NCBI GenBank assembly: GCA_053919585.1
Contig: CM132784.1
Length of the DNA: 64,000 nt
Strand: one strand, 5' to 3'
DNA from: Euprymna scolopes
Taxonomy: Eukaryota
Below, piece after piece: positions 25,169 through 58,608 of the stretch. The notes under the pieces were generated by a model. It was not told the DNA's origin, ran no database searches, and saw nothing but the letters and a program-made list of their open reading frames with translations. Position numbers and translations under genes: made by a program. Each line of letters starts with the position of its first letter. The stretch's first letter is position 1.

Positions 25169-25422
25169 GGGACCCGTGGAGCAGTGGATAGAGACGTTGA
25201 ATCTCTGCGGTTACAGGTGAGCATTGTCTGAACAGAGCAGTTTCAATCCTACTCAAAGCTGGTCAGAGGCTTAGTTGGCCCAAAACGTGGTGAGTGGAAA
25301 GCAGTAATTGCTGAGGATGCAGTTGGGAAATTTAGAATTCTTAACTCGTCGCGGTAACAACCTGACGAAGGCCGAAACGTTGTGAAACAACAACTGAAAG
25401 ATGGGGATAATAGTCCGCAATA
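25169..25422 (+). mobile_element. tRNA-headed, hammerhead-bearing short element, copy 1
   Basis: A-box-like TGGAGCAGTGG (25177), B-box-like AGTTTCAATCC (25239), CTGACGA-A-GGCC-GAAA-C-GTT (25362-25381), and tail gatggggataatagtccgcaata. Confidence 0.75.
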
Positions 25423-25434
25423 CAACACTTCACC

Positions 25435-25489
<55 letters not shown>

Positions 25490-26559
25490 TTTACTGAACC
25501 ATATTCTTGTTTTGTACTATTCGTACTATAAACCTTATTGTGTTACCCAACCTACAGTTCGTTTAATTATTCCACCGTGGATTTATTAATTTGCTTATAG
25601 CGAAATTTACGATTTAACAATTTCCATGAAGTTCTGTGTATCGGGGTTTGCGCGTTTCTACTTTGCTACTTACATTCTTCTATTGGATAATGGAACTGGG
25701 TAATACTTGGTTTCCTAAAAACGGTAAGCAAAACATAAAAACTGTTTTTGATGTGTTAGATAATGGAGCTGGATAAAACCGGTGTTCCAAAATAGTAAGT
25801 GAAACAAAGAACGGCCTTTGAAGTAAACGCGTACCATTTTCTTACCGGTGATATAGAATCACGTGAGTCGAATTGTAACAGAGTTCATATGAGCGCGTAT
25901 GAAAATATAATAAGCAGCCGAAACAACAGAAACAGCCTTTGAACGTGTATACTAATTGGCAAGTGTGCTCAGGCTTGCGTCTGAAGAAAAAAGAAAAAAG
26001 GCACCGCGTGGTCGAAGAGAAACAAAGTGTCCGCCGAAAGAGATGAACATACAAAATCAAGGGAGAAGAAAAGGTGCGATCAAAAAAGATGGATCTATAC
26101 TAAATTGTTGTCTATGACCGGCGTGTAGTGGGGTAAAAGTGAGATAATTAAGCTGTTGTCGAAAAGGGGAGAAAAAAGAACGGTAATAAATGATTCGAGT
26201 TTAAAAAAAAAAAAAAAAAAAAGAAAACGCCGAGTCGGATTTATTTATTTACTTTATTTGCATTTCGACTTAAGCAATGATACTAAAAACGAATTGCTTT
26301 TGGTCAGAGAAGAGTTGCAGAGAAGTTCACGTGTCAACAGAGGGTTGGCCGCATATTTTTGTCGTCATTACAACCCGCCATTTTGTTTCTCTCTCCATAA
26401 CCACAGGCTGTAAGTAACAAACAAACTGCATGTGTTTTTAAATCAACAACGGAATCGTTCTTTTTGTTACTGAGAACGAGTATACGTTCGCACGCATGAA
26501 AAAACACACTAAACGATTTTATACATACATTTCAATATAGGTTTGCTGGTTATCAAACA

Positions 26560-27189
26560 CGTCTACTAATTGGTCCACCGACCGCTCTGTGGGGCGCAGA
26601 GAGAAAAGCGTCTTCTGCTCGCTCAGCTACTCAGACTGCTGACTGTCAAACTCAGACTTTACTCATCTCACTAAGTGACTATATTGTCGGATTTTAACCG
26701 ACTGAAGGGGGGGGGGGAGTTTCTGCAACTCAACGGCTAAACCTGAACTCGATATAGAAGGAAAAAACAATGAAACTCTTAACTTGTGTGGAGAATCCTT
26801 CTCGGCTTTTCTCGGCTAACTGGAGTTGCAACGTATTGCCTCGTTGCTTACAACGACAAATTGTCTTTGTAATAGTAACTGTGAAACGTGTAACTTGACT
26901 AAACAAAAAAGTCCAACTAACACATCAACGATAGGGGTGTTTTATAACCCACAAGTTGATGCTATGCAAAGTTCAGTCCGACCCACGTGGTGGACAACAC
27001 ACTACTACTACTACTACTATAAAATCAGTCGACCAAGCACTTTTTTAAACCTTTTGCTTGAACGACTGCCTCCCAGAATTCCACTGCCTCCCCCCTCCAC
27101 ATCGAGTTCCGGTCAGTAATAATTACCACAATATCATCTCTCGCGTCTTTGCTTTCCATCCTACGTCAGACTTACGTCACATAAAAAAG
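26560..27189 (+). promoter_or_regulatory. Candidate promoter / 5' exon region of the nAChR-type gene
   Basis: Stretch with no recognisable repeats and relatively high GC/CpG just upstream of the first identified exon. Possible donors ccg|GTcagt (27112) and aag|GTcagt (27190), followed by AT-rich sequence ending ttttataacAG (27340). Inference only. Confidence 0.3.
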
Positions 27190-27468
27190 GTCAGTCGTAT
27201 TGTTATTGTTCTAAATTAATTGCTCAATTGATATTCCAAATTTTGTTATAAATATTCAAGCGTAAATCTTTTATTGTTCTAAATACCTCTTCCATTTCAA
27301 TACCATTTTTCTCAGTGAAATATTTCACATTTTATAACAGTGAACAACCGCAGTGTCATCCCTCACTTCAATTGTCACCAAGCTCCTGTGTCGTCCAGGA
27401 GTCATATTCCCTAACGATAGAATGTATTATTCTGTGATTCTTACTGTCACTTCGTTTTTATTTTCCAG

Positions 27469-27629
27469 GATCGGACTGTGGTGGGAAACCGGTAAAGAAC
27501 ACGTCTACAGAACAACAGTTACTTCAGAGTTTGATGAGAGGCTATGACAAATCAGTTCGACCTGTTTACAATTCTTCAAAAGCTGTAGTCGTGGGACTCG
27601 GCTTAACGCTTACACAAATTCTGGACGTG
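27469..27629 (+). CDS. Coding exon of a Cys-loop ligand-gated ion channel, nicotinic acetylcholine receptor-type subunit (N-terminal helix and beta1)
   Basis: Acceptor ttttattttccAG at 27467-68 and donor GTaagt at 27630. The phase-1 start reads (G)SDCGGKPVKNTSTEQQLLQSLMRGYDKSVRPVYNSSKAVVVGLGLTLTQILDV, matching the nAChR pattern E..LL..L...Y....RPV......V.V.L.L.L.QI.DV. Not in the ORF track in this frame. Confidence 0.93.
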
Positions 27630-28236
27630 GTAAGTTATTACGTTCAACATAGTTTTCTGGTTTGTTTCTTTTCGTAATCATGGAGTTTTTATGAATCAAA
27701 TTAATCTATTGTTAGCATTGGTTTCCCGGATATCTTTTTAGTAAAAATTTATTCTAAAAATACACTGGTTATTTGCGGGAAGAACCACGTGATAGTGGAC
27801 GGCATTCTAAGTTAAAGTTTTTTAATTGTACAAACACGCATTCATTTAAATGTAATGTTAACAAGAATCTTGCTGCACACGTTTTTATTTAGGCTGTCCT
27901 TGTAAATGTGGCAGTTAATAGCAGCTGCCATTTCAGCCTCAATGGCAATGTAGCTTGTTTGCTGTAAATAAAACTAACAGAAAAATATCAAATTCCCAGA
28001 TATAAATAAAATAAATGAAAATTTGTTTTTAAGTGTTCGAATTATTAGAGCTACAATAACAAAAAATAGAAAGGAGAGCATAACGGCAACTATTAAGCAA
28101 TATAATAAGCCTACAAGATAAAGAATAAAAGAAATACCTATATTATTCCGATGATTACGACTGCTACGTGTCATCATTACAACAATTCTCCATCCTAAGC
28201 TCATCCACGATACACAGATATCGTGAAGTAAAAGAT

Positions 28237-28375
28237 ACAGGGTTGAAAGATAAAATCGCGGCCCTAAAGTAAACAACGCTACAGCTTTATTTTAAAACTT
28301 TTATTGAAAAAAATCAATTCAGGTAACTTGATTATGAAGTAGAGTTGTTTTCTATTCAATGTAGCCGCCATGACG
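28237..28375 (-). mobile_element. Terminal fragment of the same maT-like element
   Basis: TA-cagggt terminus and homology to 51040-51145. Confidence 0.65.
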
Positions 28376-28399
28376 TATGAGGCAGAGCTTCGTAGCCCC

Positions 28400-29330
28400 A
28401 TTCGTTCAACTTCTGCAGGATCGATTTAGCAAGGTGCAGTAGGGTATTATCGTGGAGGATAATTGGACTTTTTTGTTGCCTAATGCTGGGTGTTGTTGTT
28501 GAAGTTTCTGATACATTTCATCCATTTGTTGAGAGTACTTTTCTGCCGTAACCTTTTCGCCTGCATTCAAACAAACTGTAATGGATGAGATCGGTCGAAG
28601 GCCACCAAACAGACAGCATGACATTCTTTTTGTGCAACTCTTGGTTCGGGGAGTGTCGTGAAGCTTTATCGGCGTCTAACCACTGAGCTGAGCGTCGCCG
28701 GTTTTCGTAAAGAAACCACTTTTCGTTGCAAGTCACAACTTGGTCGAGAAACATGTCGTGCTTGTTTCGTGGAAGAAGGGAAGTTGGCACTTCATAACGA
28801 TGTTTATTTTGGTTGTCGTTAAATTCATCAAGTTTCTTTATCTTTCCAATCTCTTGCAAATAGTTGGAAATAGTCGTATACGTTATTTCTAATCCAGAAG
28901 ACCAGTTTTCTAACAGTTGTGTATGGATTGGCTTCGACTAAGGCTCTTAATTGATCGTTATTAACATTCAATGGCCGATTACTACGCTGATCATCTTCAA
29001 GACTCTCATCGCCACCACAAAATTTCTTAAATCATCATTGTGCTTTGCCTTAAGTAGTGGTTCCTAAGTCAAACGCTTCGTTGATGTCGTAAGCTGTTTC
29101 AGCAGCTTTTTGGTCAAGCTTGAATTGAAATAAAATAATTATGTGAATTTGCTTTTTTTCCATCTTGTATTCGCCATTGTTTTAAAATATTCTAATTTAA
29201 ACGATTAGATAGTGATAATGTTCTTTAAAATGATATATAAAGTAAATGTATTATAATAAAAACTTATTTGAAAATACATCATTTGAAATCAAAGTTACAG
29301 TCGAAATAACTACTAGAATATGTGCACAAT
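28400..29330 (-). mobile_element. mariner (DD34D-type) transposase fossil
   Basis: ATG at 29163 begins MEKKQIHIIILFQFKL..KAAETA..INEAF; ORF 28518-28859 has FLDQVVTCNEKWFLYENRRRSAQWLD...KNVMLSVWW. Confidence 0.88.
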
Positions 29331-29399
29331 AGATTATACCATCTAATATTATGTGTATTTTTTACTTGTACTTACCCGAGCAAGGCACAATGCTACTTG

Positions 29400-30235
29400 G
29401 TCCTAATCTCTACATCATGAACGCTCTGATACCCATTTGGCATCAATTGAAATGGATGGCTCTCGTCTAGGGGAGGCCCCATGTTTTGATAAGCTTCTGG
29501 GTTTGACCTTTACTCCTGATCTTAAATGGAACACATACATCAAGTCTGTGGCCAAGGTCGCTGGGAAAATGGTGGGATCCTTCTACCGCTCCAGGAGATA
29601 TCTCACTACTGATGCAATTCTCTATCTATATAAGAGCCAAATACGTCCAAGGATGGAGTACTGCTGCCACATCTGGGCAGGAGCTGCTAAAAACAGCCTA
29701 TCCTGCCTTGACAGAGTACAAAATAGACTTCGTGGCTTGGTGGGGGATGCCCTTTTCTCTTCCCTGCAACCTCTTCCTCACAGAAGAGACATAGCGAGCC
29801 TGCCTTTGTTCTATCGTTATTTCCATGGCAAGTGATCGTCTAAGCTCCAATCTCTGGCCCCCCTTCGTCAATCTTTTTCAAAAAACACCCGACTAGCTGA
29901 AACCACCGTCAATAATTTTCCCCACTCCTTATCTGTGCCTAAATCAAAACGTAGATTCCACGAACAAAGCTTCTTTGTTATAACTGCGCGCCTGTGGAAC
30001 TCTGTTCCGCTTACCTGTTTCCCTCCCGACTTCAACCTGGATGTCTTCAAGTCCAACACAGACAAATTCCTGGTGAACCGCCCCCATGAGTAATGACACC
30101 TTATCAATTCTCCAATACTATTGCTACACTATCCCATTGAGTACTGTACACACAATAACCCTTATCCCCGAGTGGCCATTGGGCCTTGATAAGTGGTGAA
30201 CTCCATGTAAAAAAAATGTAAAAAAAAAAAAAAAA
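29400..30235 (+). mobile_element. CR1-group LINE family A, 5'-truncated copy
   Basis: ORF 29437-29835 is nearly identical to the ORF2 C-terminus. 3'UTR and poly(A) at 30209-30235. Confidence 0.95.
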
Positions 30236-30819
30236 TGGGCTACTATTTAGGATCATATATACAACGACACTTTGAAGGAAGTAGCAAGATTTCGGTTCAC
30301 ATTACACTGAAACTTCTATATGTCAGGGAGGGAATGAGGAAGTTAGGTAGAAAAATCATAGTCTAGCAGGTTGAGATGAGAAACTATTAAGGTAGACACT
30401 TTTCGGTACCTAGGAATCTCTACGGTGGAATTTTGTTGCTAATTGGGTTAGTCGGGGCACAACTGTTATGAGCTAGTTCGAGCATATTTCATGAAAATAC
30501 TTGTAAAACAGGCACATACATACAATATTGCAACGATGGGATAGAGGATGAAACTTAGTTGACATTAGATTAAATGCACTTTTTTGGACCCCATTTTAAA
30601 GTGAAAGATGAATAGTAGATGCACTAGTTTAAAGTTCGCATAAATATACCATACATCTGTCAATAGTGGCTTTATAGGGAGGAATATACTTTCCGATGAA
30701 TGTAATTTCTTAACACGATAGAGTGAGTTTATCTTCTTAAGGTTTGCGTACGTGTTGAACACTGTGGAAATAAATGATAAAATATATACACAATATATTA
30801 TATCACATTATAATATTTT

Positions 30820-31484
30820 ATTTTATTTTTTTTTACACAGTGGTCACCACTTATCAAGGCCCGAAAGCCACTCAGGGATAAGGGTTATTGCAAGTACAGT
30901 ACGTTAGTGTGGAGATTTGATGAAGTGTTTACTTAAGGGGGTGGTTCATTAGGAATTTGTTAACGTTGGACTTTAACACATCCAAGTTGTAATCAGGTGG
31001 GAAGCAGGCAGACGGAACAGAGTTCCACAGGCGTGCAGTTCTAAGAAAGAAGCTTTGTTCATGGAATCCACGTTTTGATTTAGGCACAGATAAAGAGTGG
31101 GGGAGATTTTTCACAGTGGATTCAGCTAGACGGGTGTTTTTCGTGAAAGATTGGCGAGGGGGGACCATAGATTGGAGTTCAGACGAGCACCTGCCATAGA
31201 AATAACGATAAAACAAGGATAGGCTCGCAACGTCTCTTCTGTGGGAGAGAGGTTGCAGGGTAGAGAAAAGGGCATCCTCCCACTAAGCCACGAAGTCTAT
31301 TTTGTATTCTCTCAAGGCAGGATAGGCTGTTTTTAGCAGCTCCTGCCCAGATATGGCAGCAATATTCCATCCTTGGACGTACTTGGCTCTTATATAGATA
31401 GAGAATTGCATCAGTAGTGAGATATCTTCTGGAGCGGTAGAAGGATCCGACCATCTTTCCAGCGACCTTAGCAACAGACTTGAT
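30820..31484 (-). mobile_element. CR1-group LINE family A, 5'-truncated copy
   Basis: ORFs 31179-31454 and 30929-31216 are a frameshifted ORF2 C-terminus. T-run tail present. Confidence 0.95.
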
Positions 31485-33294
31485 ATGTTTATATATATAT
31501 ATATATTATTATCATTAATAAATTATGTGTACGTTTGTATGAAAAAAAATATAGCTACTCTACATTCGGCATTTACAGCAGAAAAATATCTAGATTTGAA
31601 AAGAATTTCGGTAGAAAAATATTCATTCGTAAAATATTTAAAAAAAAAAAAGAAAGCACTCCTTCCATAATCACTTCCTTTTTTGACATTTTTTAATATT
31701 TGTATACAAAGATATATTCAATATCTGAATTTGATATTTGTTTTGTTTATTTGTTTGCCTATTTGATCAAAGAAAACATTTACCGTCGTTAATAGATTAT
31801 ATTTTCAATTGCCACTTCCGGTTCAAAAGAGAGGAAAAATAAAAATGGCAATTGGTTTCATGTTCTGTGTGAGTGTGTATCCATAACCTATTTTTTTTAA
31901 TTACGCACTTTGTTTAAAACGAATTGGTTGAAATATGAAATCATATAGAATATTTAGTTTTTGTGTCGTTCTTCGCTTTAAAACGACAACTTTTATTTGT
32001 TTTCGTTGTGAAAGATCGGCATACATTTTTATAAATAATTTATTAAATGTTTGACTTACTTTAAAGGGTTTTGTTAATTAAACAGTAAATATTCCTACGA
32101 ATTATCTTGCTCAGGAAATCGGACGATTGAACGGTACTTATTTAGCATTACACTTATTAAAAACAAAATACAGCAGATTCCTTAAGATGTACGTACTCGT
32201 GACGGAACGAAGACGTCATATTCCAAAATTCACGTAAGTTGATCTGATAGCTATTTTTTAACTAATATAATCAAAATTTACAATTTTGAGCGATTTTGAT
32301 ACTAAATTGTATGCATCATCAGGTTGATTTTGACTTCAATAGTTTGAATTGAGTTGTCTTCTGTTATTTATACATCATGACCGATGAAAACACTGCGTCT
32401 CGCTTAGTCATAAAATTTAATTTTCTTATGTAAAATAATACTTGATCAATTGACTTGATATTTAGAATACAACATTTTCATTCTGTGACCAGTACGTTAA
32501 TAACATTTTTCCTGTATTTTTGTTTTATATATAATTCTAAATAAACAACTATTGAACTAATATGTGCCTACGTATGTTTATCTTTCTATCGCTAGTTTCA
32601 TATAGATACATTAGGTTTCATTAGATTAATTTACACAAATAAAACATATATCCCTGTGTGCGCAAATATTTCACCGATAAACTCTTAAACTACTGACCAC
32701 ATAACACTGAAATTAACAGGAAATAGTAATCATAAACAAAAGACATATAACGAATAAAATCTTTGTTTAGATGAATAACGCATACAAAAATATGTCGGCA
32801 AGTTGAAATGCAAGCTATTCATTTTACCTGACGCACAGACGTTTATTACTTCTGTGCAAGTAGCTTAAAAATGGTTTGATTTTTAATCTTTTTTATCTAT
32901 CTGCCGGTAGTTCAATCGATAGGGACTGCTGCTGGAGTGGTAAAGGTTTTGGTTTCGATTCTAACCAATGGGATCCAAGTCATTTTTTTTTAAATCAGTA
33001 CTATTTATTACGTATATTATAATACTGGGTAAAGAATTATTATCTCTGTAATGATAAATTCGAAATTTGTGTAAATTAAAATATATTTCAGCGTAGTTTA
33101 CGACCGAGCAAGGCCGGAAGCAACCCCCCCCGCAATAAACGCGTATTATCTTGAAAATATGTGGACCTTGGATTCCATAAAGCTATTACTTTCTCACATT
33201 CACCAAATATATATATATATATATATATAATATATATAAGTGAAATTGTCTGTGTGTACATTTCTCTATCAAACTACTCTGTCAATTTTCAGTC

Positions 33295-33683: not shown

Positions 33684-33870
33684 GTGTATGAGAGAGAGAA
33701 GAAAAACAAGGAAAACTGATAATAAAAATTAAATAAATTACAATATTTATTAATCCATCAAAAATTCGGGAATTATAATTAAGTAAATCGTTACTCAATG
33801 GATTTTCAAAGATAGGTTCTTTTCATCAGAAGATAAGAAATAAACTTAATTATATCTTTATATTTTTTTT

Positions 33871-33898
33871 TAATTAGAATTCATTATTGAGATGAGTT

Positions 33899-33933
<35 letters not shown>

Positions 33934-34372
33934 TTGCGGACTATTATCCTCATCTTTATTAGTTGTTGTTTGACAACGTTTCGGCCAACTCTAACTCTGG
34001 CCTTCGTCATGTGGTAACCCCGACGGGATAGGAACTCCGAATCTTGTAACTGCATTCTCAGCAATCACTGCCATCCATAGTTGTTGTCGTCTCACCACGA
34101 TTTGGCCAAGTAAGCCTCTGGCCAGCTTTGAAACCGCTATCTTCAGACAATTCTCACCTAGAACCGTAGAGATTCAAAATCTCTATCAACTGCGCCACGG
34201 GCCCCGAAGGGCGATCAAGGTCAGATTTTTTGGTCTTATAAATCCACGGTTATTTATTATTTGATCTTCCATGGTCGGGGCCGTACCAAATAGTACATAT
34301 ATTTAATTGGAATTCATTATTGAGATGAGTATTATTTATTAATTTTATTCATTGCGGACTATTATCCTCATC
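33871..34372 (-). mobile_element. Same element, copy 2, with (AAAT)n tail and terminal direct repeat
   Basis: Head ggggcccgtggcgcagttgatagag at 34205. Hammerhead-like motif at 33972-34013 with C3 changed to A. 33871-33954 is repeated at 34304-34372. Confidence 0.75.
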
Positions 34373-35023
34373 ATTATTTACTTAATTATATATTTTCGAA
34401 TGAATGCGAACTAGTGATGTATTTTTACTAATGCTTGTTTTCGTATAAAAACAACCTTTTTTTGTCCATGGGTTAAGCAATTTTTCTTTAATAAAATTCC
34501 TTGTTTGAATTTTTGATATATTTATTCAATTTACATTTTTATCGTAAACTTTTTTTTTCTCTGTAATGGCTCTAATTTCGTATATTAAGGCTATTATCTT
34601 AATAGGTTCTAATTTTGAGATAAATATTATCTTTATAATTTAAGGGTGTGCTCTCCGTTAAAAACAAATTGCTTGAGATATAAGATCGAATAGAATATTG
34701 AGTTTTACATTCATTTTCACTTTCAAAGACCATTTTTTGGGAGGGGGTCTTTTTGAAAAAATATGGAAACCTATTAATGAATGAATTATTAAATATAGCA
34801 TGATGATTCCCATTCAAAAGCTTTGCGATTCAGTAGTAAACATTCATACGAATTATTATGCTAGGAAAATAGAACAATTGACCTTAGATGAGTTTGTCTG
34901 TGTCTTCTTACTGATTAGACGTAGAGACATACAGTTTAATAATATAAATTTGCAACAAATGCAAGAAATAATTAGAATCTGCGATTCTCCCAGGGTACCC
35001 GTCGTAGATTTATCATATTAGAC

Positions 35024-35069
<46 letters not shown>

Positions 35070-35631: not shown

Positions 35632-35674
<43 letters not shown>

Positions 35675-37370: not shown

Positions 37371-37401
<31 letters not shown>

Positions 37402-38113: not shown

Positions 38114-38181
<68 letters not shown>

Positions 38182-38257
38182 CAGACACACATACACACGC
38201 GCTCGTGCGCGGTGACTTTTATATAATAGTAAACATAAAGATAAATTACGTTGGAAT

Positions 38258-38730
38258 GTTTTTTTTTCTTTTTTACTCCTGTTCACTCCTTACAAAGCAT
38301 ATCGCCACTTAGACGTAAGGGGCTACTATTACTACTAGCTTTCTGGCATTTAGGGACATCAACAGTGAAGGGGTGAGATCTTGTTGCTAAGTGGGTTTGT
38401 CGGGGATATGTACGTCGAGGAGGGTGTCAGTGAAACGACTTCATCAGAACACATTCCATTAAAATATTTGTAAAACTATTAGATACAACATCGCAGCAAT
38501 AGGACAGCGGCTGGGGCTTAGTTGATAAAGTGGGACCGATTAGATTGACAATTCTTTTTTGAACCCTATCTAATAGGGGGAGACTAGTAGTGGATGCAAC
38601 AGCCCAGATGTGGCAACAATATTCTATGCCTTGGCAAATGATTGCCTTGTAAAGTTACAGGATACTCTCAGGCGTGAGTAGTCTTCTAGCTCGATAGAGG
38701 GAGCCCACCTTCTTTTCAGCAGCCTTTGCA
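38258..38730 (-). mobile_element. CR1-group LINE, divergent family C, 3' fragment
   Basis: Reverse strand reads LYKAII..GIEYCCHIWAVASTTSLPLLDRVQKRIVNLIGP...FYKYFNGMCSDE, followed by an A-rich tail. Confidence 0.8.
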
Positions 38731-38871
38731 ATGTCCTCTGTGTATTTGTTCCAGTTCATATTGCCACATATATCTCCAAGGACTTCGGTTTGATATCTTT
38801 TTAGTTTTAATTGTTTTTATTTTTTTTCTACTTACTTTCTTTGTTCCCTTCTCTCTACGTATGTTAGTATT

Positions 38872-39047
38872 AGGACTATGACAACAGCATATTCTTTTCA
38901 TTGTTTTGATTCTCCGGTATATATCCATTGATATCTTATATGTTATGTAGAGTGATTTGGTTCTCGGTTGATTAATTGTGTCTAACTATGTCGAATATAT
39001 ACTCGAGACTAAAAACAATGAAAAGAATACGCTGTTGTCATGACCCT
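38872..39047. mobile_element. ~175-bp MITE, copy 1
   Basis: TIR atgacaacagcatattcttttcattgtttt / aaaacaatgaaaagaatacgctgttgtcat. Confidence 0.8.
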
Positions 39048-39782
39048 ATTTATTATATGCTTTTCATTTTTACTTCGTCTTTTATCTTTTCTTCTCTAGT
39101 TCCCTTTGTCCCATCCCCTCCCTAATCATCACTCCTTATTTCTCATCCCCATCCCCTTCAGTCGTCCCCATTATTTCACACCATATTTCTTTTTACTTTT
39201 ACATTTTTAATCTAAATGTTCTAAAACCAGGTTTATCTTTGTATACTCATATAGTGGTATAATATCTGATTTTCTCCTCTAATGATGAGAAGCATTTGAT
39301 TTTGAAAGGCCATAATCTAAAGAGTTTCTTTGCCATTTCCTCGTATTTTTTTTTTGTTTTTAATGGCATGATGATGTAATAAAGTTCTATGTAACTTTTA
39401 TTCCTCAACTTTTTAATTTATGAATTGCTCATCTTCACCATTATTACATATGTGTGCCGATCATAGCTCGTATGGTCTAGAGATTTATCAGCACCCACAT
39501 GTAATAAAATTAAAACAAAAGAAAAAGATTTAACGAAAAAGAAATTTATTTAAAAATAAATTAACAAGAAAAAACAAAAGAAAAGATTACCATGTTTGAA
39601 GGGCAACAACTCGCTCATAAATTGTCTCCCTTAGATCATAAAGAAAGTATTTCTTAATGTATTGTGTTTTGAAATGTTTTGTTTAGTGTATTTTTATATG
39701 TATATGTGTTTCAGTCAACAAACTCAAAGAATAAATAAAAACTTTACCAGAATCCAGACAGCCAGTTCTTCAGTGAGGTTTT

Positions 39783-39938
39783 TGTTTTTACGGCCTTATG
39801 TGGAAGCCGGAATTCGGACGTTGGTTGCCTCTTTTTGCATCCCAAAATATGTCACGAACTTGTTTTTACGGCCTTATGTGGAATCCGGAATTCGGACGTT
39901 GGTTGCCTCTTTTTGCATCCCAAAATATGTCACGAACT
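39783..39938 (+). repeat. 78-bp tandem duplication
   Basis: Two units differing at one base (gaaGcc vs gaaTcc). Confidence 0.95.
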
Positions 39939-40442
39939 GACTTTACCCACCAATAGCGTTTCTTTTATATGAGTTTTAAAAGGAACTTCCTGGAACCTTC
40001 TAGAGACTCAAAAAGGAACAAAAAGGCGTTCTACGCCTTTTTATATTTATAGACGCCGATTATTATTTATTTTTATGAATAACGACATTCTAGAAACGTC
40101 TTTATGTTTTAATTAATATATCAATAAACATATTTATATATTATAAGAAATATTTATATATATCTTAATCCAATCATAGGAGAGAATATGTTCTCCTATG
40201 ACAACCATGTAGAGTTTATATTATCTTGATATGCCTGCTTTATGAAGAAAATATGCTTTCAGCTCATTTATGAGATATATACCTATACAAATACATACAT
40301 GTGCTTATACATTTATATGCCTACACATTTACATTATATATATATATATATATATATATTTGTAGTCATCGACATACAATCCTGTTTCGTTGTATCACAA
40401 CTCATCAGTGCCGCTAGACTAGCATCTCTTCCAAGCCAGGGA

Positions 40443-41720
40443 TTACATTTTAACCCCAAACAAGGCACATTGCCACTTTGATGTATGGGCTTCTATCAGG
40501 AACATAAGCTACAGAGGTACTGTGTGGGGAGTTGGACAGCAAGATGTCGGTTCACGTTACACTTGAACTTCTGCATGTCAGTACAGTTTGAGAAGCAGGA
40601 ACCCGGAAGGGAATTCGAAAGTCTAGCGGTTCTGGGGAAGAAACTACTGGAGTAGAAGGCTCTCTTGCATCTAGGGATCTCAACTGTGAAGGCGTGGGAT
40701 TTTTCTGCTTGTCGGGGGTATTTACGTCGCGGGGGGACAAGTACTTGCAGTTCGTTGGAGCATTCACCGTTAAAGTATTTGTAGAACAGGCAGAGGGATG
40801 CTACATTTCATCGATGGGACAGAGGCTGAAGCTTATATGACAGTTCAGGACTTATTAGGTTGGCGACTCTCTTTTGAACCTTGTCAAGGAGTGAGAGACT
40901 AGTAGCAGATGCATCAGCCAAATATGACAACAATACTCTATACATGGGCGAATGGTGGCCTTATAGAGGTACAGGATACTTTTGGGCGTTAGTAGTTTTC
41001 TGGCAACAGAGAATCTCCTTTTTCGCAGCAGTCCTGGCAATGCTCTCAATCTAATTGTTCCAACTCATTTTCCCTGTGAACGTTAGGCCGAGGAGTTTAA
41101 AAGATGTACTTTCAGATAAAGAGTCTTTGGCCATTGCTATTGGTGGCAGAGAAGGTTTCTTGTGGTTATTGAAGAAAACATGTGTAGTCTTGGCAGCATT
41201 GAATGTGACCATCCATTTTTGTCCCCATTCCACTACAGATTGGAGATCATCCTCTAGTGTTTCTGCCATTTCTTTAGATATGTGTTCATTTGTTTTCCTG
41301 TAGTGTCTGTTATAGAGTGTGGTGTCATCAGCATATATACCCATCTCACAGACAATTTTGTCAGGGAGGTCATTTATGAATATTAGGAACAATAGAGGTC
41401 CAAGGATAGACCCCTGAGGCACTCCTGAATTTATATCGTATTGTTTAGATGTACGACCGTCGAGGACAGCCTGGATTTTTCTCTTATCTAAGAAGGATTT
41501 AATTATGTTAAGGATTGTTCCAGTGATACCGTATGATCTGATTTTCCTGAGAAGACTTTCATGACATACCCTGTCAAAAGCCTTAGATATATCTAGAGTT
41601 ACCGCTCTACCCTCCTTTTGCTTTGTCAAGCGAATGGTATATAGGCTCAGAGATTACAGTTAGGATGTCTGCTGTGGAACGGACTTGCCTAAATCCATAT
41701 TGATGGGCGGTCAGAAGTTT
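40443..41720 (-). mobile_element. CR1-group LINE family B, 5'-truncated RT-containing copy
   Basis: ORF 41051-41629 (LDISKAFDRV, PQGSILGP, YADD) and ORF 40855-41049 (IEYCCHIW). Confidence 0.93.
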
Positions 41721-42294
41721 AGAATACATAAAAATACACAGTACATACATGAAAAATGCATACAGTAGAACCCCGGGATACGGTGGCCCTAGGATAGTTT
41801 TTTTTTTCAGGTTACGATGTAGAATACGATTTTTAAGGTCCCGGGTTACGGTATTTGCCCCGCCTTGTGGTGATTTAATATTTTCTTTTAGATTTAATAT
41901 CTATTTTTTTTTATTTAAATCTTATTATTTCATTTTCTTTTATATATTGCTTAGTATTTTCTTTTATATATTTGTTCTTTTTCCCTTCTCTTCTTTTACC
42001 CCATCATACCGCCCTCTATAAAATATTTTCCCTATCCATCTGAATGTTTCCAATGTCTTTTTACCTTTACTTTTGTATAACTTCTGCCGTGAAGCAGTTA
42101 TCTTCAAAATGCCATAGATTACAAAGATTTCTCTCTTATTTTTGTTTCTGTAACTCTTATTTACTTGATAATGTAATAAATATCTTATGTAACTTTATGC
42201 TTTATTTTAACTTATTCTACATACAGATACACAAACACATTACATATATATATATATATATGCTCCTTCAGACTATGGATACCCACGAAGTGGT

Positions 42295-42541
42295 GCCTGC
42301 GCGTGGAATTTTTTTGGCAGAAGGTGCGCAATCTCTAACCACACCTCTCCTGAGTGGAGATTGTTAAATACCAGTGGCAAGTGAAATGTATGTACAAGAC
42401 GACTGGAAACAAATACCGAGATAAGCAGAGAGTACATACAGCGCCTAGAATTCCCAAATGGTCACCCATCTGGTTCTAACCGTTGCTAAACTTCTGTGAT
42501 CTGGTGAGAACCGGTGTGTCAACGCGATTATGCCGTGTATA
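42295..42541 (-). mobile_element. 5S-derived SINE, body type I
   Basis: cccaaatggtcacccatc head with a small deletion; body gactggaaacaa..ccgagataagc. Confidence 0.82.
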
Positions 42542-42984
42542 TATCTATACACACACTCTTGGAGTATTTCTAACTGCAGCTTGGTGCCTACTACTGAAAA
42601 CGATCTCTGTGTTGTTTATTGAAAATGTCTACATGTCTATCTGGTCACAGACGAAATTTCATGCCGATAAAATTCACGAGAAACCAGTTAACCTAAAAGC
42701 GTCTATATCGATTGGCATTCTCATTTACAAAATAAATAATAAATGACTCCAGTTTTCTAAAGGTCAAGAATGCCATGATACAAAAGAAAACCATGCGATA
42801 CGAAACATTTGGCAGTCAGTATGACTGCGAGTCGCCGAAGCAGGAAAAAAAAACGTTTAGACATTTATTTAGTTGCCATAAATAGAATCACAGTTCTAGT
42901 GCTGTGTACCTTTGTGGGCGGCCATCTTTATTTTTCATCTACATGTCTCGCTCTATTTGAGATATAATAATGCACACAAAACTA

Positions 42985-43236
42985 ATTTATTGTCTATATT
43001 TTATATATACATAATCAAATTCAGACCAAGAGTTGTTGGTGATTTTCGGGAGTACAACTTGGTGCGTCTTGGACAGCTAAACTGAAAGCTGGAAGTGAAG
43101 GAAATATTTTAATTTTCGCATATGATGTTACACGAATACTTGATATAATAAAATCTTGCACCCCACGTACTCCTGCAAATCACCAACCACTTTTGGCCTG
43201 GGTGTGATTATACATATAAAAATATGGACAATAAAT
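42985..43236. mobile_element. MITE with ~85-bp imperfect TIRs
   Basis: tttattgtctatattttatat...gttggtgattt..ggagtac versus gtactcc..aaatcaccaac...aaaatatggacaataaa. Confidence 0.72.
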
Positions 43237-43719
43237 ACCACAGTCCACATGTAAATATAACATTATAACATAACATGTATATATAATATAATGTAATATA
43301 AAATCACATTAAAATATGTGTGTAATGTTACGCATAACCATTTTAAGTACTTTACAGACATTTGCATTTGAAACCCCTTAGAAAATATATAAAGGGCGGC
43401 TACGTTAAACTTCTCTCTGCTACAAATTCAAATATAATGAATAGTTATTATGTTATCTACGCTTAGAGCAAACTGTGCACTGACATGAGCATTCTCGTGG
43501 CACTTTTTTGGGCCCATCTACTTCCGTGCTGGCTTATGACAAATTTGAAACAAATGTTTTGTTTATTTACACGAGGAGCCCAATCTACTCCCTGTAGGGT
43601 AACGATCCAAAGTACCAGAAGGAAGTTAACCGGTACCACCCCTTGTCCAAAGGGTGACCTGGAATTGTGTAAGGCAGGGGAGTTCATTTCCTGAAGTATT
43701 ATACATACTCACTTACCTA

Positions 43720-43832
43720 AATACGTTTAGCGTCTAATATTGTCAAAAGGTCATCGATCTGGTACTGACCATTCAACGTTACTTAACTTTGGCGATCTGA
43801 TGAGAACTTGTATATGAACATGATTATGTCAC
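43720..43832 (-). pseudogene. Decayed 5S-derived head
   Basis: ggtcatcgatctggtactgacc..caacgttacttaactttggcgatc..gagaac. Confidence 0.6.
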
Positions 43833-43981
43833 ACACATGCACACACACATACCTAAAAATGTAAGAGTTTGAAACAAAAATGTAATTTCTCATTGCTGTT
43901 TAATAATACAGTACTATCAATGCATAAAAGACATAATTTAAAGCGAACGTGATTTATAAATTAGATTTATTTTATTTTCAG

Positions 43982-44026
43982 GATGAGAAAAATCAGGTAC
44001 TGACCACCAATGTTTGGCTGGAGACG
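43982..44026 (+). CDS. 45-nt micro-exon of the same nAChR-type subunit (beta2 / loop D)
   Basis: Acceptor tttattttcAG at 43980-81 and donor GTaagt at 44027. Phase 0/0, encodes DEKNQVLTTNVWLET and joins in frame to ...QILDV. A 45-nt exon at this position is the conserved nAChR gene structure. Confidence 0.95.
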
Positions 44027-44309
44027 GTAAGTAATATTTACATTATTGTTCTTCAAAACTCACACCTATCTAAATTATCTTTCTCGGTCTATCTTTTAGT
44101 TCTACTGTACACGGAAACTACTGGGCACATCTGTTTGAAATTTTGTTAGGCACCTTGTTATGATAAAGTGAAGCGAACTACTATTATAGTATCTGTTCGA
44201 TACACAGTTATTTAGGAATAGGCATTAGTCATTACAATACCACATTTACTCCAAAGGTTTGGTTATAAAGCACTCATCTAAGTCAACGGGCTATAATTTT
44301 TTTACTGTT

Positions 44310-44523
44310 NNNNNNNNNNNNNNNNNNNNNNNNNNNNNNNNNNNNNNNNNNNNNNNNNNNNNNNNNNNNNNNNNNNNNNNNNNNNNNNNNNNNNNNNNNN
44401 NNNNNNNNNNNNNNNNNNNNNNNNNNNNNNNNNNNNNNNNNNNNNNNNNNNNNNNNNNNNNNNNNNNNNNNNNNNNNNNNNNNNNNNNNNNNNNNNNNNN
44501 NNNNNNNNNNNNNNNNNNNNNNN
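44310..44523. other. Assembly gap (214 N)
   Basis: Run of N. Confidence 1.
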
Positions 44524-44539
44524 TATTTTTATCTAAAAA

Positions 44540-44786
44540 TTGAAGAGTTACGAAGACGTTAGTCGTGTCATTGAGACGAGTTAACTTTTGTACTCCAAAA
44601 AATTTCTACATCTGCTTCTGACGCACGTCTATGACAGTAGCTTTTTCTTAGAGTATCACAGAGAGATGAAATGTTTAATTCATGAATGTATAAGTTAAGT
44701 CGTCATAACAATGCAATTTGCAATCATCACTACTTTATTTGGCCGACAAAAAAATCGGAGACATTACTTTTGGAATGCCTCTTGTC
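44540..44786 (-). mobile_element. mariner 5' end with TIR
   Basis: Terminus reads caagaggcattccaaaagtaatgtctccg on the minus strand. The same terminus recurs at 46526-46553 (+). Confidence 0.5.
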
Positions 44787-45010
44787 TAAAACTGATAAAT
44801 AGTCAACAGCATCATGCTTTACTGCAGTTTCATGGAGTGTCCATTCTTTAGAAGTGTTTTTACACGTTTCTGGTTTGCACTATCTGGATAAAAGTACAAA
44901 CTATTTACATTTTATTAAACTCTATATCATCGTTAAGAAAAATATTAAAACAATGCACAGAAATGGATAAACAATGGAACTGCAGTAAAATGTACAAATA
45001 AGACACGTCA

Positions 45011-45390
45011 ATATTTTCATTTATTTATTTGCAGACTATTATCCTTATCTTCATAGTTGTTGTTTCAAAATGTTTCGGTCAAACACGCAGTGGATAAAAG
45101 CGTTCAATCCCTACAGTTCGAAGTGAGCATTGCCTGAAGTAAGCGGTTTCAATCCTACCCAAAGCTGTCCAGAGAATTTCTTGGCCAAAACCTGGTGAGA
45201 CGAAAAAACTATTTAAGGAAGTAATTAATGAGATTACAGTTAAAAGATTCAGCATGTCTATCCCGTCGCAGTAAACCACCTAACGAAAGCCAAAGGAATA
45301 GTTGGTCGAAACATCGTGAAAAGAACAACTATGAAGATGAGGATAACAGTCCGTAAATAAATGAAAATATTCTAATTACTCATCTCAAAG
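45011..45390 (+). mobile_element. Same element, copy 3, with an inverted copy of its own 3' end at the 5' side
   Basis: 45011-45080 is the reverse complement of 45303-45372. The hammerhead core is mutated (CTAACGA, GAAACATC). Confidence 0.75.
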
Positions 45391-45993
45391 GTCCAAATAA
45401 TAAAGTAAAGCCACGTCAATATTATTCAGTATTGTTATTAAATTATATCTTATAAGTTATTGGGCGTTTTGTATGTATGAAGTTTTTTTTTTCTTTTGAT
45501 TCGATTCCGTTTTAGAATCATATCTGAACGGTCGAGTTTATTTTTTACACGAGTACATATACAAAGATTTGCAGATATTTTTTTCAGATACACAAAATGA
45601 CTCAGAATCTTTTTTTTTACTTTTTTATGATATGAATAAATATATTGCTTAGTAATGCGATTCATTAAAGTCTCTTTTAACTCTGGCAGTCAAACCGCGT
45701 TGGCTGACTCTAAACGATGAGAAACCTATACAAGCATGTAGAATTGTAGATGCTCGCCGCCAGCCAGGACGTTATCTTTACTGATAATCTATTCGTCTGA
45801 CAAGGAAGCGGTGTGTTAATGCCAGTATATTCCTCTTTTTATTCTCTCTCGTTTAACGCTTACTTAAACACATACCATACAAAAATATTGGAAAGGATTC
45901 AACAAGATTTTAAGTAAGAATTCAAGCATGATGTTCATCGATATTTATGTTTATTGTTGACGATTTAATAATTTAACATATTTTAGTATTTAC

Positions 45994-46300
45994 TTTCACG
46001 ACGTTTCGGCCAACTATTCCTTTGGCCTTCGTCAGGTGGTGTACTGCGACGGGATAGACATACTGAATCTTAACTGTAATCTCATTAATTACTTCCTTAA
46101 ATAGTATTTTCGTCTCACCAGGTTTTGGCCAACAAATTCTCTGGCCAGCTTTGGGTAGGATTGAAACCGCTTACTTCAGGCAATGCTCACTTCGAGCTGT
46201 AGGGATTCAACGCTTTTATCCACTGCGTAGTTTACCGAAACATTGTGAAACAACAACTGAAGAGTAGGATAATAGTCCGCAAATAATAAATGAAAATATT
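45994..46300 (-). mobile_element. Same element, copy 4
   Basis: Reverse complement of 45011-45322. Carries the intact hammerhead. Confidence 0.78.
45997..46038 (-). ncRNA. Minimal type-I hammerhead ribozyme motif
   Basis: Minus strand: CAC CUGACGA A GGCCAA aggaauag UUGGCC GAAA C GUC GUG. This gives stem I CAC/GUG, a complete core, a 6-bp stem II, a palindromic ACGU stem III and a GUC cleavage triplet. Confidence 0.8.
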
Positions 46301-58590: not shown

Positions 58591-58608
58591 TTATGTTTCT
58601 GTACGCAA

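What the first reader, a model, noticed from the sequence alone, without database searches (positions are those of the whole stretch)
25169..46300. A tRNA-headed short retroelement family carrying a hammerhead ribozyme (SMalpha / retrozyme-like)
Seen: four dispersed copies (25169+, 34205-, 45084+, 46228-) of a ~260-bp unit. The two 5'-complete copies start at the same point with a tRNA-like head (GGG.CCCGTGG.GCAGT.GATAG; B-box-like GGTTTCAATCC). Next comes a degenerate hammerhead-like hairpin (ctggccagagg...ttggcc.aaacgtggtg), then about 110 nt later a CUGACGA-A-stemII-GAAAC-GUH motif and an AT-rich tail. Established: minimal type-I hammerheads with a palindromic stem III occur in Penelope-like elements and non-LTR retrozymes, and Schistosoma SMalpha combines a Pol III promoter with a hammerhead. 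Inference: this is a Pol III-transcribed, self-cleaving non-autonomous element mobilised by a Penelope-like RT. Four copies in 21 kb imply a very high genomic copy number. I cannot tell whether it has been described in this lineage.
Basis: partly seen in the sequence, partly recalled or inferred. Interest (0 to 1): 0.82.

Follow-up and report, generated by a model that had tools for sequence, protein, structure and literature searches.

The report
Hammerhead-tailed short Penelope-type retroelement family
This is a very abundant short non-coding jumping element of a large, probably cephalopod, genome that joins a tRNA-gene-style promoter motif to the minimal hammerhead ribozyme and mirror-image insertion scars of Penelope-like retrotransposons: an interesting variant of known things that this scan has already met many times in this genome.

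Summary
The repeat is real and belongs to a family with at least 13,235 heads and 28,235 hammerhead modules in the 5.9-Gb genome. The short form is about 295 bp and the full unit about 458 bp (S plus a 160-bp segment E), sometimes in tandem arrays. Copies 45084+ and 46228- are the two arms of one local inverted duplication, so the window holds three independent insertions, not four. Only 46228- keeps an intact ribozyme core.

Insertions show the published Penelope-like (PLE) hallmarks: a 5'-truncated inverted copy head-to-head with a full copy, and partial tandems. The motif fits the published PLE minimal hammerhead, and its helices covary across families. Rfam hammerhead models do not detect it.

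The tRNA head is not confirmed: ARAGORN and Rfam see no tRNA. A-box and B-box matches, 5' ends clustered about 3 nt upstream of the head, and a conserved TATAAG at -35 fit Pol III, but equally fit a Pol II promoter in the upstream partial copy.

No matching autonomous PLE was found. Self-cleavage is untested, and a genome-wide test found no excess of copy boundaries at the cleavage site.

This scan has noted the same element class 58 times on other DNA of this genome.

The parts
25169..25432 (+). Old, diverged copy (79% to consensus, S:1-284) starting at the head. It is followed by (TA)n at 25437-25488 and a diverged E-like remnant reaching about 25600.
25362..25384 (+). Dead hammerhead remnant: CUGACGA-A-GGCC-GAAAC-GUU-GUG with helix II and its loop deleted.
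33866..34378 (-). Composite insertion. In element orientation it reads: partial tail (34378-34338, S:256-295), segment E (34356-34209), full S (34205-33921), then the E1 extension to about 33866. This is a partial tandem of the PLE 'pseudo-LTR' kind.
34235..34240 (-). TATAAG 35 nt upstream of the first G of the head. It is conserved at 90% or more in 30 genomic copies of E.
33972..34013 (-). Hammerhead module with a dead core (AUGACGA, C3 changed to A). Helix II is intact, followed by GAAAC-GUU.
45016..45082 (-). Inverted tail piece (S:228-294) abutting the 5'-truncated copy on its right.
45086..45365 (+). 5'-truncated copy (S:12-294, 81%). Its hammerhead at 45280-45318 is dead (CUAACGA, G5 changed to A; helix II mismatches; GAAAC-AUC).
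45994..46227 (-). Sister copy (S:12-247, 82%), cut off 6 nt after the cleavage site. It sits in the right arm of the local inverted duplication.
45997..46038 (-). The only intact minimal hammerhead in the window: CAC-CUGACGA-A-GGCCAA(AGGAAUAG)UUGGCC-GAAAC-GUC|GUG. The predicted cleavage lies between 46000 and 45999.
46228..46294 (+). Inverted tail piece (S:225-294) of the sister copy.
44749..45331 (.). Left arm of a local inverted duplication. The right arm is 45984-46561, 89-98% complementary, with about 650 bp between the arms. It carries one of the two sister copies.
45984..46561 (.). Right arm of the same inverted duplication.
44310..44523 (.). Assembly gap (214 N). It lies outside every element piece and outside the inverted-repeat arms.

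Best explanation
The four copies belong to a non-autonomous, non-coding retroelement family that is copied by the reverse transcriptase/endonuclease of Penelope-like elements (PLEs).

Anatomy of a complete unit (about 458 bp):
- a head with A-box and B-box matches;
- a decayed duplicate of the hammerhead module;
- a spacer;
- a PLE-type minimal hammerhead, CUGANGA-A-helix II (6 bp)-GAAAC-GUC|GUG;
- an AAUAAA-rich tail;
- a 160-bp segment E, which ends in a TATAAG 35 nt before the next head.

Inferred cycle:
1. RNA starts about 3 nt upstream of the head. The promoter is either the internal A/B boxes (Pol III) or the TATA box of the upstream partial copy.
2. PLE target-primed reverse transcription starts in the AT-rich tail at AT-rich or (TA)n targets.
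3. Template jumps produce the partial tandem (tail-E-head) and the head-to-head inverted truncated copy.
4. The partial tandem places E, with its TATA box, in front of the new copy.

The hammerhead has no helix III. It can only form an active fold as a dimer through the ACGU palindrome, for example in tandem or head-to-head transcripts. Its role is unproven; candidates are processing multimeric RNA or acting as the recognition module for the PLE enzyme.

Shown here: family size, unit anatomy, insertion architecture, motif class and helix covariation.
Inferred: which polymerase transcribes it, self-cleavage, and the identity of the helper element.
For: Family size:
- 6,614 first-look candidates; the best 40 are full-length at 87-91% identity.
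- 13,235 heads and 28,235 hammerhead modules at 2 or fewer mismatches, controls 0.

Unit and tandems:
- In 28 of 30 loci fetched with segment E, it is preceded by a direct 5'-truncated tail piece; in 29 of 30 it is followed by the head of S.
- Arrays with a period of 457-461 bp exist. One shows four minus-strand units head-to-head with four plus-strand units on contig C1 near 50.14 Mb.

PLE hallmarks:
- Most full copies have an inverted 5'-truncated copy abutting their 5' end.
- In the genome listings, 13 of 13 and 8 of 8 close opposite-strand pairs are minus-then-plus, that is head-to-head. None are tail-to-tail.
- These are the features described for PLEs in PMC8557442.

Hammerhead:
- A descriptor scan gave 73 hits against 2 in controls over 361 kb.
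- The architecture matches the published PLE min-HHR: an unpaired nucleotide 5' of a long helix II, no helix III, and a short helix I (PMC4209133).
- Across 5 element families and 2 PLE families, 93.7% of cells pair, 6 of 9 pairs show compensatory changes, and 0 of 500 shuffles reach the observed score.
- 26 of 47 held modules are fully intact.

Promoter:
- The box A match is perfect in many copies (TGGCGCAGTGG). The B-box match is 9 of 11 and nearly invariant across subfamilies.
- About half of the 30 full copies end within -4 to +1 of the head.
- TATAAG at -35 is conserved.

Helper class present:
- More than 15,000 GIY-YIG candidates were found.
- ORFs of up to 806-870 aa carry RVT_1 plus a C-terminal GIY-YIG domain.
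- These elements have a same-architecture hammerhead-like motif before a (TA)n 3' end.
Against: - No autonomous PLE sharing the element's tail was found. The dominant PLE family shows no similarity beyond the GAAAC core, and no PLE coding sequence lies in 60 element loci.
- Rfam hammerhead models give no hit even at E of 5-10.
- ARAGORN and the Rfam tRNA model see no tRNA in the consensus or in 361 kb of held sequence.
- The B-box match aligns with the helix I region of the duplicated hammerhead module, so it may not be tRNA-derived.
- Absence of TTTT on the sense strand is not significant (P = 0.24).
- Thermodynamic folding predicts helix II but also an alternative hairpin that sequesters the CUGACGA box.
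- Exact-pattern counts show 96.3% of tails continue with a pyrimidine across the cleavage site (8,091 of 8,400). Cleaved RNA is therefore not a major template.
- The helix II covariation is partly circular, because two of the rows were found with a descriptor that required helix II.
Confidence: 0.62

Rival explanations
1. The element and its mobilisation are the same, but it is not a Pol III SINE. It is a deletion derivative of a PLE terminal region, retrozyme-like. It is transcribed by Pol II from the TATA box of the upstream partial copy (pseudo-LTR), as in Drosophila Penelope, and its 3' ends are set by the AAUAAA/AUUAAA signals in the tail. The A-box and B-box matches are coincidental or secondary.
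For: - TATAAG at -35 from the head is conserved at 90% or more, and the 5' ends cluster about 3 nt upstream of the head.
- Both common 3' ends lie 10-15 nt after AATAAA or ATTAAA.
- No tRNA is detected.
- The B-box match is homologous to part of the hammerhead module.
- Words of the unit occur in poly(A)/oligo-dT RNA-seq contigs from four studies.
- The PLE pseudo-LTR overlaps an internal promoter in D. virilis Penelope (PMC8557442).
Against: - Box A matches the 11-nt consensus perfectly in many copies, and it sits at +12 from the clustered 5' end, which is the tRNA-gene geometry.
- The B-box match is almost invariant across subfamilies that differ by 20% elsewhere.
- Copies show no poly(A) tails.
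- The RNA-seq contigs may be host introns or UTRs.
Confidence: 0.3
2. An ordinary tRNA-derived SINE mobilised by a LINE (for example the RTE or CR1-like elements abundant here), in which the hammerhead-like motif and the inverted neighbours are incidental.
For: LINE reverse-transcriptase fragments are common around the copies (window 29437-29835, 31179-31454, 41051-41629). Cephalopod-type Ceph-SINE signatures exist in this genome (460 hits).
Against: - The element carries no Ceph-domain or RTE-like motif.
- It has no poly(A) or simple-repeat LINE tail.
- The strict head-to-head orientation bias (21 of 21 close pairs) and the partial tandems are not LINE features.
- The hammerhead motif covaries and belongs to the PLE-specific minimal class.
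Confidence: 0.04
3. A 458-bp satellite-like repeat spread by recombination or segmental duplication rather than by retrotransposition.
For: Tandem arrays with a period of 457-461 bp exist. Two of the four window copies were duplicated at the DNA level.
Against: - Tens of thousands of dispersed copies lie on all chromosomes.
- Their 3' ends are defined, while 5' truncation points are graded.
- Subfamilies of different ages coexist.
Confidence: 0.03

Closest known systems
Minimal hammerheads (min-HHR) in the pseudo-LTRs of metazoan Penelope-like elements (Cervera and de la Pena 2014, PMC4209133)
   Same: CUGANGA and GAAA boxes. [quoted passage not shown] No helix III or loop 3, so only a dimer can form helix III (ACGU palindrome). 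A short helix I. Massive copy number. Association with PLE-type terminal repeats.
   Different: Here the motif sits in a 295/458-bp non-coding unit with A/B-box matches, not in the flank of an RT-EN ORF. Helix I is only 3 bp plus a possible second 3-bp step. Activity is untested, and the published min-HHRs themselves cleave poorly in vitro.
Schistosoma SM-alpha / Sj-alpha SINE-like elements with a hammerhead (Ferbeyre et al. 1998; cited in PMC4209133; details from my own knowledge)
   Same: A short, highly repeated non-coding retroelement that combines Pol III-type A/B boxes with a type-I hammerhead.
   Different: SM-alpha carries a canonical hammerhead with a short helix III and proven cleavage. 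Here the motif is the helix-III-less minimal form. The element forms PLE-style inverted and partial-tandem insertions with a 160-bp inter-unit segment. The lineage is different (mollusc-like genome), and no sequence comparison was possible with these tools.
Animal non-LTR retrozymes (tandem hammerhead repeats giving circular RNAs), proposed to be non-autonomous PLE derivatives (bioRxiv 10.64898/2026.07.22.740005; PMC7761336)
   Same: Non-coding, hammerhead in every unit, occasional head-to-tail arrays (period 457-461 bp), and an inferred dependence on PLEs.
   Different: Most copies here are dispersed single or composite insertions, not long arrays. The unit is somewhat larger than the 170-400 nt I recall for retrozymes (from my own knowledge, not checked in a paper here). 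It has promoter-like A/B boxes and a TATA box. Circular RNA was not tested.
Non-autonomous Chlamys PLE derivatives such as MRC1 of Chlamydomonas (Craig et al. 2021, PMC8557442)
   Same: Short non-coding elements that produce pseudo-LTRs and multicopy head-to-tail insertions through PLE machinery.
   Different: Those share their 3' ends with identified autonomous families and lack canonical hammerheads. Here a hammerhead is present and the autonomous partner is unidentified.
Ceph-SINEs of squids and cuttlefish (Akasaki et al. 2010; PMC5786205)
   Same: tRNA-type heads, and apparently the same host group. The Ceph signature is present 460 times in this genome.
   Different: This family has no Ceph-domain or RTE-derived motif. 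Its tail and insertion mode are of PLE type, not RTE type.

Membership tests
Hammerhead ribozyme, PLE minimal class (min-HHR) | Conserved core boxes CUGANGA and GAAA with a GUH cleavage triplet | tested here: met
   The family consensus and 33 of 47 held modules keep both boxes. The triplet is GUC in 25 and GUU in 16. There are 28,235 genome matches to the 33-nt module at 2 or fewer mismatches, control 0. In the window only 45997-46038(-) is intact.
Hammerhead ribozyme, PLE minimal class (min-HHR) | Helix II longer than usual, with one unpaired nucleotide at its 5' end | tested here: met
   A-GGCCAG/UUGGCC gives 6 bp with an 8-nt loop. 4 of 6 pairs show compensatory changes across families. 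The published description is in PMC4209133.
Hammerhead ribozyme, PLE minimal class (min-HHR) | No helix III or loop 3; a palindrome that allows a dimeric helix III | tested here: met
   GAAAC-GUC with the ACGU palindrome and no intervening loop, read directly from the sequence. RNAcofold did not specifically predict the dimer, which such energy models are not expected to do.
Hammerhead ribozyme, PLE minimal class (min-HHR) | Helix I closing the core | tested here: inconclusive
   Only 3 bp (CAC/GUG), possibly extended by GUU/AAC after an internal loop. 2 of 3 pairs covary with the PLE versions (CUC/GAG).
Hammerhead ribozyme (Rfam RF00163, RF00008 and related models) | Match to a curated covariance model | tested here: not met
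   No hammerhead hit at the gathering score or at E up to 5-10 on the window copies and 20 further loci. A different, more canonical motif at 40379-40425(-) reaches 19.5 bits. The models require a helix III that this class lacks.
Hammerhead ribozyme | Site-specific self-cleavage | not testable with these tools
   The genomic proxy was negative. Only 3.7% of 8,400 exact tails lack a pyrimidine just 5' of the predicted site.
tRNA-derived SINE (SINE2) | Head recognisably derived from a tRNA | tested here: not met
   ARAGORN finds nothing in the window, the 30-copy consensus (including the relaxed setting) or 361 kb of held sequence. There is no Rfam tRNA hit at E up to 5-10.
tRNA-derived SINE (SINE2) | Internal Pol III A and B boxes at tRNA-like spacing | tested here: met
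   TGGCGCAGTGG/TGGCGCAGTTG at S:9 fits TRGCNNAGTGG. GGTTTCAATCC at S:71 matches GGTTCGANNCC at 9 of 11 positions. Both are conserved across subfamilies. The consensus box sequences are quoted from my own knowledge.
tRNA-derived SINE (SINE2) | Discrete 5' end at the Pol III start, and transcription by Pol III | tested here: inconclusive
   About half of the 30 full copies end within -4 to +1 of the head. That position is also about 30 nt downstream of a TATA box. Which polymerase acts cannot be tested here.
tRNA-derived SINE (SINE2) | LINE-derived 3' tail, or a poly(A)/simple-repeat end | tested here: not met
   The tail is AAUAAA-rich without poly(A). The insertion architecture is of PLE type.
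PLE-dependent non-autonomous element | Partial tandem (pseudo-LTR) upstream of a full copy | tested here: met
   In 28 of the 30 loci fetched with E, E is preceded by a direct tail piece (5' start between S:71 and S:270); in 29 of 30 it is followed by the head of S. The window copy at 33866-34378 has the same layout.
PLE-dependent non-autonomous element | Inverted 5'-truncated copy abutting the 5' end (head-to-head) | tested here: met
   All 21 close opposite-strand pairs in the genome listings are minus-then-plus. The feature is described in PMC8557442.
PLE-dependent non-autonomous element | 3' end shared with an autonomous RT/GIY-YIG element of the same genome | tested here: not met
   The dominant PLE family (RVT_1 + GIY-YIG) shares only the hammerhead architecture.
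Non-LTR retrozyme | Head-to-tail arrays of hammerhead-bearing units that yield circular RNA | tested here: inconclusive
   Arrays with a period of 457-461 bp exist but are a minority. Circular RNA was not testable.
Ceph-SINE | Ceph domain (CORE-like CCTTGGGAAAG plus the RTE-like 23-mer) | tested here: not met
   Neither motif is in the family consensus, although the 23-mer occurs 460 times elsewhere in the genome.

The most novel reading that the evidence does not exclude
This may be a true 'Penelope SINE' whose insertion mode rebuilds its own promoter. The PLE-type template jump would place segment E, with its TATA box at -35, in front of each new head. New copies would then be born transcription-competent, driven by Pol III through A/B boxes plus an upstream TATA. 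The helix-III-less hammerheads would pair as dimers in tandem or head-to-head transcripts and release unit-length, possibly circular, RNA templates.
Probability: 0.25. Interest if true: 0.75.

Novelty: new variant of a known kind. Interest (0 to 1): 0.55.

Why it matters
SINEs are textbook parasites of LINEs. A SINE-like family that instead uses Penelope-like machinery and carries the Penelope minimal hammerhead would extend the SINE concept to a third retrotransposon class. It would also link three separately described things: SM-alpha-type ribozyme SINEs, PLE min-HHRs and animal retrozymes.

The family offers tens of thousands of copies, subfamilies of different ages, tandem and head-to-head forms, and a conserved inter-unit segment with a TATA box. 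That makes it a good natural system for asking what PLE hammerheads are for and how pseudo-LTRs form.

It is also a practical annotation point. Automated pipelines report almost no SINEs in decapod cephalopod genomes (PMC13218726). Families like this one probably sit among the 'unclassified' repeats.

Tried and rejected
- **Rfam scans.** Gathering and E-value scans of the window copies and 20 more loci gave no hammerhead or tRNA hit.
- **ARAGORN.** Nothing in the window, the consensus or all 361 kb of held sequence.
- **PLE partner search.**
  - blastn of the element and E against 30 GIY-YIG loci found only one unrelated insertion.
  - Local alignment of the dominant PLE tail against the full unit gave a score of 17, equal to the shuffle mean.
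  - tblastn of the PLE ORF against 60 element loci and the window found nothing.
- **E as a decayed duplicate of the head.** Not significant (244 of 500 shuffles score as high).
- **Exact TSD search at the head boundary.** Nothing, because the true boundaries lie outside the composites and in AT-rich tails. One copy (L029) shows a possible imperfect 13-15-bp duplication by eye.
- **Absence of TTTT as evidence for Pol III.** Not significant (P = 0.24).
- **Cleavage-site boundary idea.**
  - In 29 composites, 7 upstream partial copies start at S:236-242, against cleavage after S:241.
  - Genome-wide, however, 8,091 of 8,400 exact tails read through the site.
  - Reverse transcriptase stalling at the helix II hairpin explains the local cluster equally well.
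- **Read laying.** The four runs laid (X1-X4) are contigs and look like low-coverage DNA, so they give no transcript ends.
- **Thermodynamic folding of monomer and dimer.** It shows helix II only.
- **Ceph-SINE membership.** Rejected.

Full report
**1. The observation**

I built a 30-copy majority consensus S of 295 nt from own-genome hits. Against it:
- 25169+ is 79% identical over S:1-284.
- 34205- is 91.5% identical over S:1-295.
- 45086+ is 81% identical over S:12-294.
- 46227- is 82% identical over S:12-247.

The assembly gap at 44310-44523 lies outside every element piece and outside the inverted-repeat arms described below. Nothing in the finding depends on continuity across it.

Two of the four copies are not independent.
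- 45084+ and 46228- sit in inverted-repeat arms 44749-45331 and 45984-46561, which are 89-98% complementary.
- The 267-bp non-element part of the arm has only two full-length matches in the whole genome, and those are the two arms.
- Both copies begin at S:12 behind the same inverted tail piece.
- The window therefore documents three insertions plus one local DNA-level inverted duplication.

**2. Size of the family**

The window's genome has 5.9 Gb in 925 contigs, with chromosome-scale contigs numbered to at least 45. It holds:
- 6,614 first-look candidates for the 284-nt query; the 40 scored are full-length at 87-91% identity;
- 13,235 matches to a 24-nt head pattern at 2 or fewer mismatches (control 0);
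- 28,235 matches to the 33-nt hammerhead module at 2 or fewer mismatches (control 0).

Contigs of four public runs, which behave like low-coverage DNA, pile up on the hammerhead bin 45987-46033 at roughly 8 x 10^4 times the depth of the unique spacer. The tool warns that this is not a copy number, so I use it only as an order of magnitude.

Three things fit a decapod cephalopod: the genome size and contig number, 460 copies of the Ceph-SINE 23-mer (control 0; motif from PMC5786205), and 'mollusc metagenome' run labels. This is an inference.

**3. True anatomy**

- Many full copies carry conserved sequence upstream of the head and downstream of the tail.
- I fetched 30 loci using that upstream segment, E, as the query. 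In 28 of them E is preceded by a direct 5'-truncated tail piece, in 29 it is followed by the head of S, and an inverted 5'-truncated copy usually lies further upstream.
- S plus E is about 458 bp.
- The head-pattern and tail-pattern listings show head-to-tail arrays with a period of 457-461 bp. One array has four minus-strand units abutting four plus-strand units on contig C1 near 50.14 Mb.
- E is at least 90% conserved and contains TATAAG 35 nt before the first G of the head. In the window this is 34240-34235.
S:68-152 aligns with S:194-273 at score 69, against 22 +/- 4 for shuffles. In that alignment the B-box-like GGTTTCAATCC lines up with the helix I region GGTTACCACC.

**4. Insertion architecture**

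- Most full copies have an inverted, 5'-truncated copy directly at their 5' end.
- In the genome listings, every close opposite-strand pair is minus-then-plus, meaning heads together and tails outward: 13 of 13 and 8 of 8. None are tail-to-tail.
- Partial tandems, an adjacent inverted 5'-truncated copy and (TA)n association are exactly the features given for Penelope-like elements and their non-autonomous derivatives in PMC8557442.
- The window's two sister copies are convergent, which is one more sign that they arose by DNA duplication rather than by this mechanism.

**5. The hammerhead**

The module reads CAC-CUGACGA-A-GGCCAG(AGGAAUAG)UUGGCC-GAAAC-GUC|GUG.

- **Class.** It matches the PLE minimal hammerhead defined by Cervera and de la Pena: the core boxes, an unpaired base at the 5' end of an unusually long helix II, no helix III (so only a dimer can be active; the ACGU palindrome would allow it), and a short helix I (PMC4209133).
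- **Descriptor scan.** A simple descriptor finds 73 such motifs in the 361 kb I hold, against 2 in reversed or complemented controls. The hits include several unrelated canonical-looking hammerheads.
- **Covariation.** Across five element families and two PLE families, 93.7% of helix cells pair and 6 of 9 pairs carry compensatory changes. The covariation score is 0.62, against 0.31 for shuffles (0 of 500 reach it) and 0.03-0.11 for slid controls (A2). The helix II signal is partly circular, because two rows were found with a descriptor that demanded helix II. The helix I signal is not circular.
- **Intactness.** 26 of 47 held modules are fully intact. The triplet is GUC in 25 and GUU in 16, as expected from CpG decay.
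- **Rfam.** No hit at any threshold tried. A different, more canonical motif at 40379-40425(-) reaches 19.5 bits. The miss is what one expects for a motif without helix III.
- **Energy folding.** It reproduces helix II only, and it suggests a competing hairpin over the CUGACGA box.
- **Window copies.** Only 45997-46038(-) is intact. This agrees with the earlier scan note s1-280023.

**6. The head and the promoter question**

Evidence bearing on a Pol III head:
- Box A (TGGCGCAGTGG or ...GTTG at S:9) and a 9-of-11 B-box match at S:71 are present and conserved across subfamilies.
- No tRNA is detected by ARAGORN or Rfam in the consensus, in about 100 copies or anywhere in 361 kb. 'tRNA-headed' is therefore unproven.
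- About half of the 30 best full copies end within -4 to +1 of the head, typically at (C)TTC|GGGG. The rest continue into E.

That terminus lies about 12 nt before box A, which is tRNA-gene geometry. It also lies about 30 nt after the TATAAG of E, which is Pol II or TATA-assisted Pol III geometry. Both common 3' ends lie 10-15 nt after AATAAA or ATTAAA. The sense strand lacks TTTT, but that is not significant (P = 0.24).

I therefore cannot decide between a Pol III SINE and a Pol II-driven pseudo-LTR promoter. I give them roughly 0.45 and 0.3 of the probability within the PLE-mobilised reading. The remainder covers use of both promoters or neither.

**7. The helper**

- PLEs are extremely abundant. 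There are 15,396 GIY-YIG candidates, open frames reach 806-870 aa, and many are in head-to-head clusters.
- A representative ORF has RVT_1 plus a C-terminal GIY-YIG domain.
- The dominant, young family ends in CUC-UUGAAGA-A-GCCCG(CAUAAAU)CGGGC-GAAAC-GUU-GAG, followed about 70 nt later by (TA)n. This is the same architecture as the element's hammerhead, but with U instead of C3.
- That family has no other similarity to the unit.
- No PLE coding sequence flanks the 60 element loci.
- Earlier follow-ups in this scan also failed to find the partner. One unchecked note reports a GIY-YIG relic followed by such a head.

**8. Does the ribozyme cut in vivo?**

- In 29 composites, the upstream direct partial copy starts at S:236-242 in 7 cases, at S:243-270 in 11 and further upstream in 11. 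The predicted cleavage is after S:241.
- This could mark cleaved RNA 5' ends. It could equally mark reverse-transcriptase stalling at the helix II hairpin.
- Genome-wide, 8,400 exact tails start with RUGAAAC..., and 8,091 of them (96.3%) have a pyrimidine at the preceding position.
- Boundaries exactly at the site are therefore at most a few percent of copies. Self-cleavage remains unshown.

**9. Distribution and expression**

- Exact 31-mers of the unit occur in runs labelled with at least six coded organisms, plus mollusc and invertebrate metagenomes.
- They occur in six runs on record as RNA, from four studies, at 0.23-0.40 of the sampled words.
- This shows that the family is shared by relatives and is present in transcripts. 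It does not show that the element has its own transcript.

**10. Comparison and novelty**

- The motif class, the insertion architecture and the idea that hammerhead repeats are non-autonomous PLE derivatives are all published (PMC4209133, PMC8557442, bioRxiv 10.64898/2026.07.22.740005).
- Schistosoma SM-alpha is the closest precedent for A/B boxes joined to a hammerhead.
- The searchable library holds no description of such an element in cephalopods or other molluscs.
- The recent cuttlefish genome paper reports almost no SINEs (PMC13218726).
- The family is not a Ceph-SINE.
- I class it as a new variant of a known kind.
- This scan has noted the same element class 58 times on other DNA of this genome.

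**11. Verdict**

- Confidence is about 0.85 for 'non-autonomous, PLE-mobilised element with a min-HHR'. It is 0.62 for the full mechanism as stated. Interest is 0.55.

Noticed in passing
window 4447-4563(+), 12105-12216(-), 53691-53807(-), 58608-58725(+), 58812-58927(+): Five 5S rRNA-like matches above Rfam's gathering score (38-75 bits), with decaying scores. They are probably 5S-derived SINE copies or pseudogenes rather than functional genes.
   Followed up: no
window 40379-40425(-): A second, more canonical hammerhead-like motif (CUGAUGA-GUUG...CAAC-GAAAC...GUC). It lies just before a (TA)n run and just after the 3' end of a LINE-like repeat. Rfam Hammerhead_3 gives 19.5 bits, E = 0.09, below threshold.
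   Followed up: partly
L032-L060, e.g. L050:904-956(-); G000:C12:14496712-14504984: A very young and very abundant Penelope-like family: over 15,000 GIY-YIG candidates, ORFs up to 806-870 aa with RVT_1 + GIY-YIG, and frequent head-to-head clusters. Its 3' hammerhead-like motif has U in place of the conserved C3 (UUGAAGA), and the element ends at (TA)n.
   Followed up: partly
L031 (G000:C553:29970-33197): The unplaced contig C553 encodes a bacterial UvrC-like protein (GIY-YIG + UVR + UvrC_RNaseH domains). It is probably a bacterial contaminant or symbiont contig in the assembly.
   Followed up: partly
G000:C1:50143888-50146989: A mirror-image array of the element: four minus-strand units (period 458 bp) abutting four plus-strand units (period 458-460 bp). 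It is seen only as pattern coordinates, and the sequence was not read.
   Followed up: no
L073:3062(+), L069:614(-), L070:758(-), L046:967(-), L018:72-127(+), L091:489-540(-): Several other hammerhead motifs from unrelated or related families lie in the flanks of element loci. Some have palindromic helix III loops (UCGA, ACUAGU, ACGCGU). Two are sister families of the present element, with compensatory helix II changes.
   Followed up: partly
window 29437-29835(+), 31179-31454(-), 41051-41629(-): Fragments of non-LTR reverse-transcriptase ORFs (RVT_1, 90 bits for the last one). The surroundings of the copies are a patchwork of LINE debris.
   Followed up: partly
L002:1312-1493(-), L015:1858-2081(+), L013:2443-2538(-): Weak sub-threshold U2 snRNA matches (24-30 bits) next to element copies. 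These may be U2-derived repeats.
   Followed up: no
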